Shown here one piece after another: positions 22,292 to 44,141 of a DNA stretch of 64,000 bases (position 1 is its first letter; each line of letters starts with the position of its first letter). The translations under genes and the position numbers were made by a program. The notes under the pieces were generated by a model that ran no database searches, was not told the DNA's origin, and worked only from the letters and a program-made list of their open reading frames with translations. The DNA comes from Heptranchias perlo. Its lineage: Eukaryota. Where the stretch lies: contig NC_090366.1 in the NCBI RefSeq assembly GCF_035084215.1, forward strand, positions 13,578,001 to 13,642,000, written 5' to 3'.

Positions 22292-22540
22292 TCAGTTTGA
22301 CTGGAATTTGATGTGTGCGTATTCTGTGCCCTCCGCCTTGTGAACAGTCCCGTCACCGCTGGGCAGCTTGAGGAAGTTGATGTTGGCGTAGAGAAGGTCC
22401 TCCTGGTCCCTGGGCTGTTCCTGTCCGGCATCTCCTCCTGCAGGACCTTCAGGGAGGTTCTGGGCACCTGGTGTCTCCGCCTCGTTTGTTTCGTCACTGC
22501 TGGTGTTCCAGGGGTTAACAACCTCTGTGTTCTGGGCCTC
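22292..22540 (-). CDS. Gene B terminal cytoplasmic exon with ITIM LLYANI (22379-22396) and ITIM-like/ITSM TEYAHI (22310-22327)
   Basis: tttgtAG acceptor; translates EAQNTEVV...[37 protein letters not shown]-stop (this frame is not in the ORF track). Confidence 0.88.
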   Translation of the reverse strand, partial: EAQNTEVVNPWNTSSDETNEAETPGAQNLPEGPAGGDAGQEQPRDQEDLLYANINFLKLPSGDGTVHKAEGTEYAHIKFQSN

Positions 22541-41500: not shown

Positions 41501-44141
41501 GTGAGAGTCTGCCCGTAGTGTTTGGGTGATGGGACCAGAGTCAGAACAGAAGAATATGTCAGAGTTCCACCATGCTGAGTTACACTGTTTGAGACAGACC
41601 CGGGAACATCAGTGGGATTGTCCCAGGTTAAGTCAGGTGCTGTTCCCCCGCACGTTGTGTTGAAGGTGCAGGTTATTTTGCAAGATTTACCCTCAATAAT
41701 TTCAGGAGCGAATATTGTTGGTTTATCTGTGAAATCTGGCAGAGAATACATCCTTTTAGTTAAATATCACTTGGAGAATCAGTTCAAATATGAACCACAG
41801 TCCCACAAGGGGGTTTTTTCTCCAGAAAAGAGAAGGCTGAGGGCTGACCTGATAGAGGTCTTCAAAATCTCATAAAATTGACAATTAATGGACACGGTCA
41901 AGACATTGAATCATTGATTATAAAGTGAGTATTAACGGTTGCTTTAAGACTGAACTGGAAGGTATCGCCTGGTTATTGATAATCAGAAGCTGCGTTATTG
42001 TAATGTTTTGTGTTAATAGTTTATATTATTTCCCATTGACTGTTGAAAGTGAATTGATGAGTAATTATAAACAGCACTTACCGGAAACGTGAAGCTGTGT
42101 TGCTGGGAAGTAGCTGAAGCTATTCTTCTTGTCAAATTCTATCCTGAAATAATAAGGACCTGCATCTTCTGCGGTGATGTCGTTTATAATCAGGGAACAG
42201 TCGCCATTTTTCAGGTCTCCAGACAGACCGGTCCGATGTCTGAATCGGTCCGACTCGTGTCCGTGGTCCTTGGAGTGAAAGGCAATAGAATCGCCCGTCT
42301 CTGTATGAAACCACACTCCATCTCGATGTTTGTTTGCCAAATTCGATGGGTAACTGTAATGGCATGGAATCAGCGCACACAAACCTTTCTGTGCTCTCAC
42401 ATCTCGTGGGGTGTCGGCCTTCCACTCTTGTGACAATACAGCTGAGGAGAAAAAATATCGATACCATTTACCTGCTCCATCCCCCTCGATACCGTCACCG
42501 AACAAAAATCTATCGCCCTCAGCCTTGAAAGCTCCAACTGACCCTGAGCATCCACAGCCATTTTTGGGGGGAGAGAGTTCCAGATTCCCACTCCCCTTTG
42601 TGTGAAGAAGTGCTTCCCGACTTCACCCCTGAACGGCCTGGCTCTAATTTTAAGGTTCTGCCCCCTTTTTCTGGACTCCCCCCACCAGAGGAAATAGTTT
42701 CTCTCCATCGACCCCATCAAAACCAATGGCATTTGAAACACCTTGATTAGATCATCTCGCAGTCTTCTATACTCAAGAGAATACAAGCCATGTCCCCTGA
42801 CGATCGAATCCCCCAATAACAATTCCATTTCTGCCCCCCTGTGCAGCCGAGTCTCCCACGGTGCCGTGGATTTGCTCCTGGTTGCATTGCCCCGAGGTGT
42901 CATCTCCCTCATTGTTATTCAACACTGAATACTGGTTTGTGAGTGTCACGCTCCCAGGGGACTCCTGCACTGCCTGCCTGTTCCTCTTCGTCTATCTGGT
43001 GCTCACCCGCTCCCTCTCCGCCTGAACTCTCTGCAGCAGCGGGGTGACCACCTCCTGAAACGTGCTATCCAAGAAACACTTCCCATGTTCGCTGTACTGA
43101 CACCAGCCGCCCCTCAAGCTCAGAAACTCTGAGCTTGAGCTCGAGCAGTTGGCGGCACTTCCTGCACATGTGGTTTTCCAGGACGCACAAAGTTTACGCA
43201 ACCTCTCCTCGTAATTTAACCCTCTAAGTCCCGGTATCATTCTGGTGAATCTGCACTGCACCCCCTCCAGGGCCAATATACCCTTCCTGAGGTGCGTTGC
43301 CCAGAACTGAACGCAGTGTCTCCAGCTGGGCTCAGGAGTAGGAACCCGGGTTAATTTTCTATTCCCCAACCCAAGGCCAAATCCTGGTGCCTTTCCCCCT
43401 GGGAATCAAACATTGCCGATTCCTCAGGAGAGATGGAGACTGTTTCTATCAGAGATGAACCCAAAGAATCCTGGGCCTGAATAATGGGAGGAGCCCGTTC
43501 TGATCGCAGGCCAGTGAAACAATGTCAGCAAATTGTATTTATATAGCGCCTTTAAAACAACGTCCCGAGGCTCCTCACAGGAGCGATTATCAGACACAAT
43601 CTGACACCGAGCCACATAAGGAGATATTAGGACAGGTGACCAAAAGCTTGGTCAAAGAGGGAGGTTTTAAGGAGCGTCTTAAAGGAGGAGAGAGAGGCGG
43701 AGAGGTTTAGGGAGGGAATTCCAGAGCTCAGGGCCCAGGCAGCTGAAGGCACGGCCGCCAATGGTGGAGCGATGGAAATCGGGGGATGGACAAGAGGCCA
43801 GAATTGGAGGAGTGCAGAGATCTCGGAGGGTTGCAGGGCTGGAGGAGGTTACAGAGATGGGGGGGGAGTGAGGAGGCCATGGAGGGATTTGAACACGAGG
43901 ATGAGAATTTTAAAATCGAGGTGTTCCCGGACCTGGAGCCGATGTCGGTCAGCGAGCACAGGGGGTGATGGGTGAACGGGACTCGGTGCGAGTTAGTACA
44001 CTGAGTCACTGCTGAATTTGGTCCCTCGTCATAACTCAATAACAATGATCGTTTGCACCGACTATTATCCATAAATATCTCCGACCTGACGATGATATTA
44101 CCTTGGAGAAGTGACAGGAGGAAGTAAGGTTTCCTGATCAT
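22292..44141 (-). CDS. Siglec-like gene B, complete: 18 coding exons, 1503 aa, 14 Ig domains (1 V + 13 C2), TM, ITIM + ITIM-like tail
   Basis: Exon lengths 40+360+294+10x282+276+294+97+82+249 = 4512 nt, in frame with compatible phases and GT-AG junctions. Confidence 0.9.
22740..23000 (-). mobile_element. tRNA-headed Deu-domain SINE
   Basis: A-box (TGGCCCAGTGG) and B-box (GGTTCGAGCC) like head followed by Deu body. Confidence 0.7.
23108..23189 (-). CDS. Gene B first cytoplasmic exon
   Basis: ttttgcAG / GAG-GTAACG; [27 protein letters not shown]; phase 2 to 0. Confidence 0.82.
23330..24090. mobile_element. Two CR1 3' fragments in opposite orientation
   Basis: [14 protein letters not shown] on minus; [12 protein letters not shown]...[15 protein letters not shown] on plus. 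Confidence 0.8.
24126..24222 (-). CDS. Gene B transmembrane exon
   Basis: [32 protein letters not shown]: uncharged hydrophobic run then basic stop-transfer; ttacAG / GTACGT. Confidence 0.85.
25248..25687 (-). mobile_element. CR1 3' fragment inserted in an L2 fragment, with AGGTTTAG target-site duplication
   Basis: Same subfamily as 11095-13596; TSD at 25240-25247 and 25688-25695. Confidence 0.88.
25762..26055 (-). CDS. Gene B exon, membrane-proximal Ig domain 14
   Basis: Paralogue of 182-475 (one aa difference). Confidence 0.88.
26340..26615 (-). CDS. Gene B exon, C2-set Ig domain 13
   Basis: Paralogue of 760-1035. Confidence 0.9.
27237..27518 (-). CDS. Gene B repeat Ig exon 10
   Basis: 282 nt open frame, canonical splice sites. 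Confidence 0.85.
28199..28480 (-). CDS. Gene B repeat Ig exon 9
   Basis: 282 nt open frame, canonical splice sites. Confidence 0.85.
29094..29375 (-). CDS. Gene B repeat Ig exon 8
   Basis: 282 nt open frame, canonical splice sites. Confidence 0.85.
30059..30340 (-). CDS. Gene B repeat Ig exon 7
   Basis: 282 nt open frame, canonical splice sites. Confidence 0.85.
31228..31509 (-). CDS. Gene B repeat Ig exon 6
   Basis: 282 nt open frame, GTAAGT donor. Confidence 0.85.
32397..32678 (-). CDS. Gene B repeat Ig exon 5
   Basis: 282 nt open frame, canonical splice sites. Confidence 0.85.
33566..33847 (-). CDS. Gene B repeat Ig exon 4
   Basis: 282 nt open frame, canonical splice sites. Confidence 0.85.
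34718..34999 (-). CDS. Gene B repeat Ig exon 3
   Basis: 282 nt open frame, canonical splice sites. Confidence 0.85.
35609..35890 (-). CDS. Gene B repeat Ig exon 2
   Basis: 282 nt open frame, atttAG / GTGAGT. Confidence 0.85.
36540..37640 (-). mobile_element. CR1 LINE 3' fragment with internal 51-bp tandem repeat x8 (~37063-37469)
   Basis: [24 protein letters not shown]; repeated [16 protein letters not shown]. Confidence 0.88.
37644..40221 (+). mobile_element. Degenerate Harbinger/PIF-like non-autonomous element with Myb/SANT-like remnant; CR1 nested inside
   Basis: [26 protein letters not shown]...QCRKKFNAL (frameshifted); homologous to 62140-63946; GGG-starting imperfect termini. Confidence 0.6.
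38580..39554 (+). mobile_element. 5'-truncated CR1 LINE (RT C-terminal half, intact frame)
   Basis: YINDLD...KFADDTK...[15 protein letters not shown]; (ACTCTATG)n tail; TATCC on both flanks. Confidence 0.92.
40333..40614 (-). CDS. Gene B repeat Ig exon 1 (most diverged copy)
   Basis: 282 nt; DKIEDSS..GNSAAL variant. Confidence 0.85.
40740..41400 (+). mobile_element. Deu-domain SINE with 33-bp VNTR (~40757-41212), paralogous to 14490-15150
   Basis: Same unit and flanks as the gene A copy. Confidence 0.75.
41442..41735 (-). CDS. Gene B exon, Siglec domain 2
   Basis: One aa different from gene A domain 2; 294 nt. Confidence 0.9.
42082..42441 (-). CDS. Gene B exon, Siglec V-set domain
   Basis: [13 protein letters not shown] and YYFRIE with essential Arg; 360 nt. 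Confidence 0.93.
42470..43330 (-). mobile_element. CR1-derived fragments (3' RT end interrupted by an ORF1/esterase-like piece)
   Basis: [30 protein letters not shown]; LTNQYSVL and IVIG-DSIVRG GDSL-like remnants. Confidence 0.7.
44102..44141 (-). CDS. Gene B signal-peptide exon (coding part; exon begins at 44183)
   Basis: [13 protein letters not shown] plus phase-1 GTAATA donor. Confidence 0.8.

What the first reader, a model, noticed from the sequence alone, without database searches (positions are those of the whole stretch)
22292..44141. A giant (14-Ig, 1503 aa) inhibitory Siglec with a CD33-related-type tail in an apparent cartilaginous fish
Seen: a complete in-frame 18-exon gene whose V-set has GLCxxIPC, DCSL and YxFRxE (essential Arg), an uncharged TM, and a tail ending [10 protein letters not shown]...GTEYAHIK. 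Established: proximal ITIM plus NF followed by distal TEYxxI is the hallmark tail of mammalian CD33-related Siglecs, which are short (2-5 Ig); the long Siglec, sialoadhesin (17 Ig), lacks these motifs; CD22 has 7 Ig. Domain 14 has the MAG Ig5-like CxC pattern. Inference: this combines sialoadhesin-like reach (possible escape from cis-sialic-acid masking) with inhibitory signalling, an architecture I do not know from any characterised Siglec, and would bear on how old CD33r-like receptors are.
Basis: partly seen in the sequence, partly recalled or inferred. Interest (0 to 1): 0.85.

Follow-up and report, generated by a model that had tools for sequence, protein, structure and literature searches.

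The report
Giant inhibitory Siglec of a shark
A real, transcribed shark gene encodes an unusually long, 14-domain relative of the sialic-acid receptors (Siglecs) with an inhibitory signalling tail; sister genes already sit in public databases as misnamed automatic models, but I found no paper describing them.

Summary
On the minus strand, 44141 to 22292, 18 exons with AG/GT borders and matching phases give 4512 nt (1503 aa): leader, Siglec V-set with the key arginine, a C2 domain, ten near-identical 282-nt exon repeats, two proximal domains (the last matches only MAG Ig5), an uncharged TM, and a tail with LLYANI and TEYAHI.

Spliced contigs from one sample (4 of 4 runs) show four predicted 3' junctions, two of them joining TM, cyt1 and cyt2.

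The window is Heptranchias perlo. The neighbouring paralogue's 15 in-window exons are exact, collinear pieces of a public 1506-aa model named 'heparan sulfate proteoglycan-like'. Models with 7-10 such repeats exist in other sharks and rays, two of them carrying the same tail. The design is therefore uncharacterised rather than unseen.

It is not a sialoadhesin orthologue (AU p 0.009). Its V+C2 unit groups beside tetrapod CD33-related Siglecs (93/89), but no true MAG or CD22 was in the tree. The tail matches the CD33r format, with a Y-Y spacing of 23.

How many repeats reach the mRNA, sugar binding and SHP recruitment remain untested.

Earlier notes of this scan mention sibling copies on adjacent DNA.

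The parts
44102..44141 (-). Exon 1: ATG and leader [13 protein letters not shown], ends in phase 1
   Evidence: Identical in the paralogue and in public protein P0288.
42082..42441 (-). Exon 2: Siglec V-set domain ([18 protein letters not shown])
   Evidence: Pfam V-set E 1.3e-11. Best PDB hit is sialoadhesin at 64.8 bits, with W2 and R97 aligned. AF2 pLDDT 91.5. Foldseek top hit 1qfo, TM 0.90.
41442..41735 (-). Exon 3: C2-set domain 2
   Evidence: Pfam C2-set_2 E 2.1e-9. PDB: CD33 domain 2 at 32.8 bits, MAG at 27.6 bits.
40333..40614 (-). Exon 4: repeat R1 (I-set, 282 nt, phase 1-1)
35609..35890 (-). Exon 5: repeat R2
34718..34999 (-). Exon 6: repeat R3
33566..33847 (-). Exon 7: repeat R4
   Evidence: PDB: MAG Ig3 region at 58.5 bits, alongside generic I-set hits.
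32397..32678 (-). Exon 8: repeat R5
   Evidence: Identical to two repeats of gene A.
31228..31509 (-). Exon 9: repeat R6
30059..30340 (-). Exon 10: repeat R7
29094..29375 (-). Exon 11: repeat R8
28199..28480 (-). Exon 12: repeat R9
27237..27518 (-). Exon 13: repeat R10
   Evidence: The joint to D13 (27237/26615) is in contigs of 4 of 4 runs, but only 28 letters lie on the shorter side.
26340..26615 (-). Exon 14: domain 13 (Ig_3/ig type)
   Evidence: The joint 26340/26055 to D14 is in 4 of 4 runs.
25762..26055 (-). Exon 15: domain 14, MAG-Ig5-like membrane-proximal domain (ITCVCA)
   Evidence: The only strong PDB hit is mouse MAG residues 401-482, E 2.6e-11; the next hit is at 0.008.
24126..24222 (-). 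Exon 16: uncharged transmembrane helix plus KCVRK stop-transfer; GTACGT donor in phase 2
   Evidence: The joint 24126/23189 is in 4 of 4 runs.
23108..23189 (-). Exon 17: cytoplasmic exon 1 ([27 protein letters not shown])
   Evidence: Joints on both sides are in 4 of 4 runs.
22292..22540 (-). Exon 18: cytoplasmic exon 2 with LLYANI (ITIM) and TEYAHI (ITIM/ITSM-like), stop at 22292
   Evidence: A contig covers 22314-22539 with 0 other letters.
27237..35890 (-). Tandem array of nine exon-plus-intron units (R2-R10; spacing 891-1169 bp; a CA-rich stretch lies after each donor). R1 is separated from it by a 4.4-kb intron that holds a retroelement fragment.

Best explanation
Gene B of this window (Heptranchias perlo, sharpnose sevengill shark) is an intact, transcribed member of a large family of Siglec-type receptors found across sharks, rays and skates.

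What it encodes:
- a leader peptide;
- a Siglec V-set domain with the conserved F-strand arginine;
- a C2-set domain;
- ten near-identical I-set domains, one 282-nt phase-1 exon each;
- two membrane-proximal domains, the last of the MAG-Ig5 type;
- an uncharged TM helix;
- a cytoplasmic tail of about 115 residues ending in an ITIM (LLYANI), then 23 residues on a TEYAHI motif, then 8 residues to the C-terminus.

Shown here: the gene structure, the domain identities, four of the five 3' splice joins in RNA-derived contigs, the same layout in a public model of the neighbouring paralogue and in other elasmobranchs, and homogenisation of the repeat exons within lineages.

Inferred: the V-set at the tip of a 14-Ig stalk binds sialylated ligands, possibly in trans beyond the cell's own glycocalyx. 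On engagement the two tyrosines are phosphorylated and recruit SHP-1/2-type phosphatases, which damps activation of the leukocyte carrying the receptor.

Inferred evolutionary position: a cartilaginous-fish lineage that combines a MAG-like domain backbone with a CD33r-like tail, close to the common stock of MAG and CD33-related Siglecs. Its third-domain exon has been amplified to about ten copies.
For: Gene model: 18 exons, AG/GT borders, consistent phases, 4512 nt.

Domains:
- Pfam V-set, C2-set_2 and Ig_3/I-set.
- V exon: best PDB hit sialoadhesin at 64.8 bits, with Sn W2 and R97 aligned to W and R; AF2 pLDDT 91.5; among the Foldseek rows shown, ranks 1-46 are all Siglec V-sets.
- D14 matches only MAG Ig5 strongly.

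Transcription: intron-less contigs with CT..AC ends show joins 22540/23108, 23189/24126 and 26055/26340, plus 26615/27237 with only 28 letters on its shorter side. Each is seen in 4 of 4 runs of one sample. The tail contig has 0 other letters over 22314-22539, a stretch in which the encoded tail of gene A differs from gene B.

Public counterpart: 15 of 15 in-window exons of paralogue A are exact, collinear substrings of P0288 (1506 aa, H. perlo).

Family:
- 1269 proteins at E<=1e-3 for the V exon.
- Of the 120 listed relatives of P0012, all but three are elasmobranch.
- Repeat counts are 10 (H. perlo A and B, Chiloscyllium, Hypanus), 8 (S. canicula, Stegostoma) and 7 (S. torazame).

Selection and homogenisation:
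- None of the 20 repeat exons in the window has a stop; all keep AG/GT.
- 14 synonymous against 19 non-synonymous variable changes, and exons more alike than the introns in 27 of 28 unit pairs.
- All 20 H. perlo repeats form one clade, SH-aLRT 99.

Arginine: 139 of 147 F-strand motifs in 125 family proteins keep R.

Tail: Y-Y spacing is 23 in 22 of 22 motif-bearing elasmobranch tails.

Placement:
- In the V+C2 tree the family (99/99) lies beside the tetrapod CD33r clade at 93/89.
- Gene A domains 1-2 against PDB: CD33 97.5, MAG 90, Siglec-10 85.7, CD22 33.9, Siglec-15 29.3 bits.
Against: - There are no binding or signalling data of any kind.
- Short contigs cannot tell how many of the ten repeat exons reach the mature mRNA of gene B.
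- The D14-to-TM joint was not among the joints listed. It is only compatible with the contig coordinates: 30 unplaced letters at the end of the D14 contig, and a TM contig that starts at 24220.
- All four runs come from one sample, and their RNA nature is deduced from the spliced contigs, not from the record.
- The Sn Trp106 position is Phe here.
- Only 22 of 125 elasmobranch hits matched my strict tail pattern in their last 70 residues. Ray proteins have PVYASL...VTYAEL instead.
- The tree has no mammalian MAG or CD22 and no Siglec-15, several long branches, and 93/89 is below the tool's 'starred' level.
Confidence: 0.72

Rival explanations
1. It is the shark orthologue of sialoadhesin (Siglec-1), a long macrophage adhesion receptor that simply kept an ancestral tyrosine-motif tail.
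For: The V exon's best sequence and structure matches in the PDB are mouse sialoadhesin: 64.8 bits against 45.6 for MAG, and Foldseek TM 0.90 with rmsd 1.5. The length is similar (14 against 17 Ig). RefSeq names some relatives 'sialoadhesin-like'.
Against: - In the V+C2 tree the three tetrapod sialoadhesins sit elsewhere.
- Forcing family plus Sn into one clade costs 24.3 lnL, p-AU 0.009, although the group was named after seeing the tree.
- V+C2 scores against gene A are 56-78 bits for tetrapod Sn and 82-96 for mammalian CD33r.
- D14 is a MAG-Ig5-type domain.
- The repeats arose by within-lineage amplification of a single exon type.
- Tetrapod Sn tails lack the motif pair.
Confidence: 0.06
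2. It belongs to the MAG (Siglec-4) lineage. On this view it is a duplicated, immune-type MAG paralogue with Ig3 amplified, not a CD33r relative, and the CD33r-like tail is the ancestral fish-MAG ITIM tail.
For: - D14 matches only MAG Ig5 strongly.
- The 6-Ig family member P0012 aligns with mouse MAG residues 4-382 plus a second stretch, 231 bits.
- The repeat matches the MAG Ig3 region at 58.5 bits.
- Shark 5-Ig 'MAG-like' proteins (P0262, P0111) carry the same tail and are the family's nearest neighbours, at 82/54.
- Bornhoefft et al. 2020 (PMC7226832, passages read) report ITIMs in fish MAG and call the motif ancestral.
Against: - MAG is the only 5-domain Siglec in the PDB, so its total score is inflated.
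- Over domains 1-3, Siglec-8 scores 122.9 against 109.7 for MAG with P0012.
- Over domains 1-2, CD33 scores 97.5 against 90 for MAG.
- The family plus the shark MAG-like pair groups with tetrapod CD33r at 93/89.
- No bona fide MAG could be put in the tree, so this rival is not really tested.
Confidence: 0.25
3. The 1503-aa form is mostly a genomic potential. Because all ten repeat exons are 282 nt and phase 1-1, mature transcripts may skip many of them and give much shorter receptors.
For: Any subset of the repeats can be skipped in frame. Family members with 1-2 repeats are common in public models. Short-read contigs collapse the repeats.
Against: - All 20 repeat exons of genes A and B keep intact frames and AG/GT sites, and are more alike than their introns in 27 of 28 unit pairs.
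- The public model of gene A includes all ten.
- About ten repeats recur in distant species.
Confidence: 0.2
4. The repeat array is an assembly artefact, or the gene is a decaying pseudogene in a duplicated block.
For: R4, R6 and R7 are identical. Three 1169-bp units are 99.4-99.8% alike in their introns.
Against: - The window has no N.
- Gene A carries the same number of repeats with a different internal spacing.
- No exon has a stop or frameshift.
- Spliced transcripts match gene B's tail with 0 other letters.
Confidence: 0.03

Closest known systems
Mammalian CD33-related Siglecs (e.g. Siglec-5, -7, -9)
   Same: - A Siglec V-set with the essential Arg, followed by a C2 domain.
- An uncharged TM.
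- A tail built as E-x-L-x-Y-A-x-[IL]-x-F, about 16 residues, then T-E-Y-x-x-I-[KR], then 3-4 residues to the C-terminus.
- The V+C2 unit lies beside the tetrapod CD33r clade.
- Both are tandem multigene clusters whose V domains diverge fast.
   Different: - 14 Ig domains instead of 2-5 (the CD33r range is recalled).
- It has MAG-Ig5-type and D13-type proximal domains, which the CD33r entries in the PDB did not match.
- It falls outside, not inside, the tetrapod clade.
- Synteny was not tested.
Myelin-associated glycoprotein (MAG, Siglec-4)
   Same: The domain order V, C2, I-set, Ig, CxC-type Ig5 is collinear. Fish MAG is reported to carry ITIMs (PMC7226832, passages read).
   Different: The third-domain exon is amplified to ten copies. 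The gene is one of many clustered paralogues. Mouse MAG is only 90 bits over domains 1-2, no better than CD33.
Sialoadhesin (Siglec-1, CD169)
   Same: A very long Ig stalk. The V-set is the closest solved structure, and the Sn Trp2 and Arg97 positions are kept.
   Different: This gene has an ITIM/TEY tail, whereas three tetrapod Sn tails lack the pair. A joint clade is rejected. The stalk is made of one recently homogenised exon type.
Public automatic gene models of elasmobranchs (P0288 'heparan sulfate proteoglycan core protein-like' and P0285 'sialoadhesin-like' of H. perlo; P0286 of Chiloscyllium; P0289 of Hypanus; P0011 'hemicentin-1-like' of Stegostoma)
   Same: The same family and the same giant layout. 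P0288 is the paralogue 25 kb away and shares 96.5-100% nucleotide identity in every exon compared except the V exon.
   Different: Gene B's own exons are not identical to any protein I fetched, apart from the leader and R5. The models carry unrelated names, and some are fused or read the tail in another frame.
CD22 (Siglec-2) and shark CD22-like models
   Same: A multi-Ig inhibitory Siglec. A 1280-aa Heterodontus CD22-like model shows that long stalks with ITIM-like motifs occur elsewhere in sharks.
   Different: Domains 1-2 score only 33.9 bits against human CD22. The tail has two motifs, not four or more.

Membership tests
Siglec family | N-terminal V-set Ig domain of the Siglec type | tested here: met
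   Pfam V-set and Ig_CD22. The top PDB sequence hits are Siglecs. AF2 pLDDT is 91.5, and among the Foldseek rows shown ranks 1-46 are all Siglec V-sets.
Siglec family | Conserved F-strand arginine that binds the sialic-acid carboxylate | tested here: met
   The R of YYFRIE aligns with sialoadhesin R97. R is kept in 139 of 147 such motifs in 125 family proteins. Binding itself was not tested.
Siglec family | Three-cysteine pattern of the V-set (a B-E intrasheet pair plus one Cys for a bond to domain 2) | tested here: met
   C21, C26 and C81 are invariant or nearly so in alignment A1, and they align with the sialoadhesin cysteines. This is the pattern only; the bonds were not tested.
Siglec family | Sialic-acid-dependent ligand binding | not testable with these tools
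   Needs a recombinant protein and a glycan array.
CD33-related Siglecs | Falls within the CD33r clade in a Siglec phylogeny | tested here: inconclusive
   The family lies beside, not inside, the tetrapod CD33r clade, with support 93/89. No mammalian MAG or CD22 and no Siglec-15 was in the tree.
CD33-related Siglecs | Short ectodomain of 2-5 Ig domains (definition recalled) | tested here: not met
   14 Ig exons.
CD33-related Siglecs | Membrane-proximal ITIM plus a distal ITIM-like TEYxx[IV] near the C-terminus | tested here: met
   LLYANI and TEYAHI, with a Y-Y spacing of 23 and 8 residues after the distal Tyr. Mammalian hits show spacings of 21-26 and 7 residues after the distal Tyr in 15 of 16.
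CD33-related Siglecs | Location in the CD33r gene cluster (synteny with human 19q13.4) | not testable with these tools
Sialoadhesin (Siglec-1) | Clade with tetrapod sialoadhesins | tested here: not met
   Sn sits elsewhere in the tree. The AU test rejects a joint clade, p 0.009.
Sialoadhesin (Siglec-1) | Short tail without tyrosine signalling motifs | tested here: not met
   An ITIM and a TEY motif are present. The lizard, frog and parrot Sn tails lack the pair.
MAG (Siglec-4) | MAG-type fifth (membrane-proximal) Ig domain | tested here: met
   D14 matches mouse MAG 401-482 at E 2.6e-11; the next PDB hit is at 0.008.
MAG (Siglec-4) | Five Ig domains and orthology to MAG | tested here: inconclusive
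   The backbone is collinear with MAG in the 6-Ig relative P0012, but there are 14 domains here and no bona fide MAG was available for a tree.

The most novel reading that the evidence does not exclude
This family is the cartilaginous-fish counterpart of the tetrapod CD33-related Siglecs. On that reading, the CD33r-type inhibitory tail and lineage predate the split of cartilaginous and bony vertebrates. The ancestor had a MAG-like five-domain ectodomain, later shortened in tetrapods. Sharks and rays have kept a version with about ten repeats (14 Ig) by concerted evolution of a single exon, because reach beyond the glycocalyx is itself selected in an inhibitory receptor.
Probability: 0.35. Interest if true: 0.7.

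Novelty: new variant of a known kind. Interest (0 to 1): 0.55.

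Why it matters
The papers I could read treat Siglec-1, CD22, MAG and Siglec-15 as the ancient Siglecs. They describe CD33-related Siglecs as fast-evolving or mammalian, and one states that fish genomes lack them (PMC7226832, PMC9630641 and PMC9008986, passages read).

A large elasmobranch family with a CD33r-format tail, a MAG-like backbone and a V+C2 unit placed beside tetrapod CD33r would move the origin of that inhibitory module to the base of jawed vertebrates.

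The giant members also make one question testable: does stalk length, which in mammals is tied to the non-signalling sialoadhesin, change how an inhibitory Siglec reads trans against cis ligands?

A practical point follows too. These genes are mislabelled in public annotation as HSPG2-like, hemicentin-like, MAG-like or CD22-like, which hides the family from comparative work.

Tried and rejected
Tried, with little or no yield:
- TRF cannot see the roughly 1.17-kb exon array, because its longest period is 500. I mapped the array by ORFs and anchors instead.
- tblastn of P0288 on the window gave tangled repeat hits. I replaced it with exact-substring tests per exon.
- The Pfam family PF27822, which the database lists for mammalian CD33r hits, is not in the local Pfam copy. 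What it covers could not be looked up, so it gave no test.
- The TM exon and both tail exons gave no Pfam hit at E<=0.1.
- Paper searches: Siglec + cartilaginous fish (22 papers); Siglec + sialoadhesin + fish + ITIM + evolution (41 papers); Siglec + shark (325 papers, of which I saw the 20 listed); CD33-related/Siglec/elasmobranch (none of the 15 listed holds 'elasmobranch'); CD33-related + Siglec + amphibian + fish (3 papers). None of the papers I looked at describes shark Siglecs. The whale-shark genome paper only lists Siglecs among gnathostome gene families. Two reviews had no relevant passage. Subscription-journal papers, such as the 2018 Bornhoefft review cited in PMC9630641, and all supplements were not visible and may bear on the 'not described' claim.

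Considered and rejected:
- Sialoadhesin orthology.
- CD22 or Siglec-15 affinity.
- Positive selection as the sole cause of the A/B difference in the V exon. Synonymous divergence is raised as well, pS 0.173 against 0.013-0.031 in other exons, which fits exchange with another paralogue or an older V exon better.
- MTYSPF in cyt1 as a motif. The Tyr is Asn in gene A's protein.

Not done:
Multi-domain comparisons used the public protein P0288 of the paralogue and other fetched proteins.
- Whether gene B has its own public model is unknown.

Full report
**1. The observation**

The minus strand between 44141 and 22292 carries a chain of open exons that I rebuilt one at a time.
- There are 18 exons. 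All have AG acceptors, and all that precede an intron have GT donors.
- The leader ends in phase 1. All 14 Ig exons are phase 1-1. The TM exon ends in phase 2 at a GTACGT donor. cyt1 restores phase 0, and cyt2 runs to a TGA ending at 22292.
- I only added up lengths.
- The quoted motifs are all present: [24 protein letters not shown], the uncharged TM, and LLYANINF...[11 protein letters not shown].
- The window has no N.

**2. What the exons are**

Pfam calls the second exon a V-set (E 1.3e-11; Ig_CD22 also passes), the third a C2-set_2, and the repeats and D13 Ig_3/I-set. The TM exon and the tail exons have no family.

Results against solved structures:
- V exon: mouse sialoadhesin is best at 64.8 bits, ahead of MAG 45.6, Siglec-5 45.4, Siglec-10 43.8 and CD33 43.4. 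Sialoadhesin Trp2 and Arg97 align to W and to the R of YYFRIE, and Trp106 aligns to a Phe.
- V exon model: an AlphaFold model built on 20 aligned sequences has pLDDT 91.5. Its best Foldseek match is sialoadhesin with bound sialyllactose (TM 0.90, rmsd 1.5 A). Among the rows shown, ranks 1 to 46 are all Siglec V-sets.
- D2: CD33 32.8 and MAG 27.6 bits, behind nectin-4.
- Repeat: the MAG Ig3 region scores 58.5 bits, among generic I-set hits.
- D13: generic.
- D14: mouse MAG residues 401-482 (Ig5) at E 2.6e-11, with nothing else below E 0.008.

**3. Transcription**

The one sequencing-run search gave four small runs of one sample holding about a third of the sampled words.

Laid on 22200-27600, their contigs skip the introns at exactly the predicted places, with CT..AC ends on the plus strand:
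- 22540/23108, cyt2 to cyt1;
- 23189/24126, cyt1 to TM, which confirms the unusual donor and phase;
- 26055/26340, D14 to D13;
- 26615/27237, D13 to R10, with only 28 letters on the shorter side, so this one is weaker.

Each joint is seen in 4 of 4 runs. The runs are recorded only as 'RNA?', so their cDNA nature is my deduction from the spliced contigs, and they are one sample and one study.

The tail contig has 0 other letters over 22314-22539. In that stretch the encoded tail of gene A differs from that of gene B, so the transcript comes from gene B or from an identical copy.

The D14-to-TM joint was not among the 15 joints listed (97 more were not shown). The D14 contig carries 30 unplaced letters and the TM contig begins at 24220, which fits a k-1 overlap. 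That is inference.

Nothing was laid on the 5' half. Short contigs cannot count repeat exons.

**4. Where it comes from and what is public**

The V exon finds 1269 proteins at E<=1e-3 in the representative library. The best are shark and ray models under a mix of automatic names: Siglec-5/8/10/12/13/14, MAG-like, CD22-like, CD33-like, sialoadhesin-like and hemicentin-like.

The window holds a second copy, gene A (leader at 18894, running off the left edge), and a different Siglec-type gene C.

All 15 in-window exons of gene A are exact, collinear substrings of P0288. This is a 1506-aa Heptranchias perlo model named 'basement membrane-specific heparan sulfate proteoglycan core protein-like', with ten repeats, a TM and an LLYANI...TEYAQI tail. 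So the window is H. perlo, and the giant layout is already an automatic gene model. Gene B's own exons match no fetched protein exactly, apart from the leader and R5.

Counts of repeat domains in other public models:

| Model | Repeats |
|---|---|
| Chiloscyllium P0286 (full tail) | 10 |
| Hypanus P0289 | 10 |
| Scyliorhinus canicula | 8 |
| Stegostoma P0011 (a mis-spliced model whose tail is read in another frame) | 8 |
| S. torazame | 7 |
| Hemitrygon | 5 |

I found no paper on these genes. Bornhoefft et al. 2020 (PMC7226832, passages read) state that fish have Siglec1, CD22, MAG and Siglec15 and lack CD33-related Siglecs, and that the ITIM of fish MAG looks ancestral. Sharks are not mentioned there.

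**5. The repeats**

Within the window:
- The 20 repeat exons of genes A and B differ by 0-13 of 282 nt, and all are open with AG/GT.
- Variable changes are 14 synonymous against 19 non-synonymous.
- Exons are more alike than their introns in 27 of 28 unit pairs, for example 96.8% against 92.7%. Three 1169-bp units are 99.4-99.8% alike in their introns, so they are very young.

Across species, repeat domains group by lineage:
- all 20 H. perlo repeats form one clade (SH-aLRT 99);
- 15 Scyliorhinus repeats form one clade (95);
- 19 batoid repeats form one clade (100).

So the stalk is either homogenised within each lineage or was amplified independently in each. In both cases it ends at a similar count of about ten. 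A CA-rich stretch follows every repeat donor.

**6. Which Siglec lineage?**

Over V plus C2, the gene A protein scores as follows in the PDB (query typed from P0288):

| PDB protein | Bits |
|---|---|
| CD33 | 97.5 |
| MAG | 90 |
| Siglec-10 | 85.7 |
| Siglec-5 | 85 |
| Siglec-8 | 80.9 |
| CD22 | 33.9 |
| Siglec-15 | 29.3 |

The 6-Ig relative P0012 is collinear with mouse MAG (231 bits). Over three domains, however, Siglec-8 (122.9) is slightly ahead of MAG (109.7).

A maximum-likelihood tree of 37 V+C2 units (227 columns) gives the following:
- the elasmobranch family at 99/99;
- a weak link (82/54) to two 5-Ig shark 'MAG-like' proteins that carry the same tail;
- that group beside a tetrapod clade of Xenopus, turtle and mammalian CD33r proteins (100/99), at 93/89;
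- sialoadhesins, gene-C-type proteins and bony-fish MAG/CD22-like proteins on the other side.

Forcing the family together with sialoadhesin is rejected, p-AU 0.009, with the group named after seeing the tree.

The limits are serious. I could fetch no bona fide MAG, CD22 or Siglec-15, several branches are long, and 93/89 is below the tool's starred level.

**7. The tail**

In the last 70 residues, an ITIM followed by TxYxx[ILV] occurs in 22 of 125 elasmobranch hits, always with a Y-Y spacing of 23, and in 16 of 119 mammalian CD33r hits, with spacings of 21-26. Both tails read E-x-L-x-Y-A-x-[IL]-x-F ... T-E-Y-x-x-I-[KR] and then stop after three or four residues.

Many rows miss the strict pattern because they are fragments, fused models or variants. 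Rays, for example, have PVYASL...VTYAEL.

The arginine of the V-set is kept in 139 of 147 motif instances in the family.

**8. Reading**

The gene is real, intact and transcribed at least over its 3' third. It belongs to an elasmobranch-wide Siglec family that joins a MAG-like domain backbone to a CD33r-format inhibitory tail. Its giant form is a conserved option of that family, not a one-off.

Sialic-acid binding, trans reach and SHP recruitment are inferences from conserved residues and motifs.

'Unknown architecture' holds for the literature I could search, but not for the sequence databases.

Noticed in passing
window 1-18894 (minus strand): Gene A is a tandem paralogue of the finding, about 25.2 kb away, with the same 10-repeat layout. 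Its 15 in-window exons are exact pieces of public protein P0288 (H. perlo, 1506 aa). Its TM and tail exons lie off the left edge of the window.
   Followed up: yes
window 15833-16201 vs 42082-42441: The V exon is the outlier between paralogues A and B: 88.6% nucleotide identity and a 9-nt indel in the predicted C-C' region, against 96.5-100% for every other exon and 98.6% for the next intron. Synonymous (pS 0.173) and non-synonymous (pN 0.074) divergence are both raised, so exchange with another paralogue, or an older V exon, fits better than positive selection alone.
   Followed up: partly
window ~50610-60869 (minus strand): Gene C is a different Siglec-type gene. It has a C2 exon (60582-60869), four Ig exons, a CxC-type domain (52324-52653) and a tail exon with ADNIYENCNL..SIYANI (50610-50720). 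I found no V exon and no TM exon for it in the window. The public model P0285 of a sister copy is a read-through fusion with the next gene.
   Followed up: partly
window 28589-35114: The three 1169-bp exon-plus-intron units of R4, R5 and R6 are 99.4-99.8% identical in their introns, and exons R4, R6 and R7 are identical. This points to a very recent tandem triplication. Gene A instead shows a period of about 2.3 kb, two exons at a time.
   Followed up: partly
window 10962-13509 (+) and 38445-39464 (+): Reverse-transcriptase ORFs of LINE type lie in the intron after repeat R1 of gene A (703 plus 152 aa open) and, as a shorter fragment, in the matching intron of gene B.
   Followed up: no
window 14510-14961, 40759-41212, 44477-45521, 46130-46914: 33-bp minisatellite arrays (14-32 copies, 88-94% matches) sit in the D2-R1 intron of both paralogues and upstream of gene B.
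   Followed up: no
protein P0021 (Chiloscyllium punctatum, 662 aa): This family member ends in a TM segment with an arginine (ILILGIRAGIF) and a very short tail. It may be an activating, adaptor-coupled partner of the inhibitory members, as in paired receptors.
   Followed up: no
protein P0011 (Stegostoma tigrinum, 1463 aa): This public giant model retains intron pieces between repeats and reads the last exon in a different frame from the ITIM frame. This is either a model error or a real ITIM-less variant.
   Followed up: no
proteins P0128/P0155 (Polyodon spathula, 1242-1300 aa): A paddlefish 'CD22-like/sialoadhesin-like' model has about eleven near-identical copies of a D13-type domain before a CxC-type last domain, by my reading of its sequence (not counted by script). 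That would be a parallel case of single-exon stalk amplification in a bony fish. No ITIM pair is seen in its tail.
   Followed up: no
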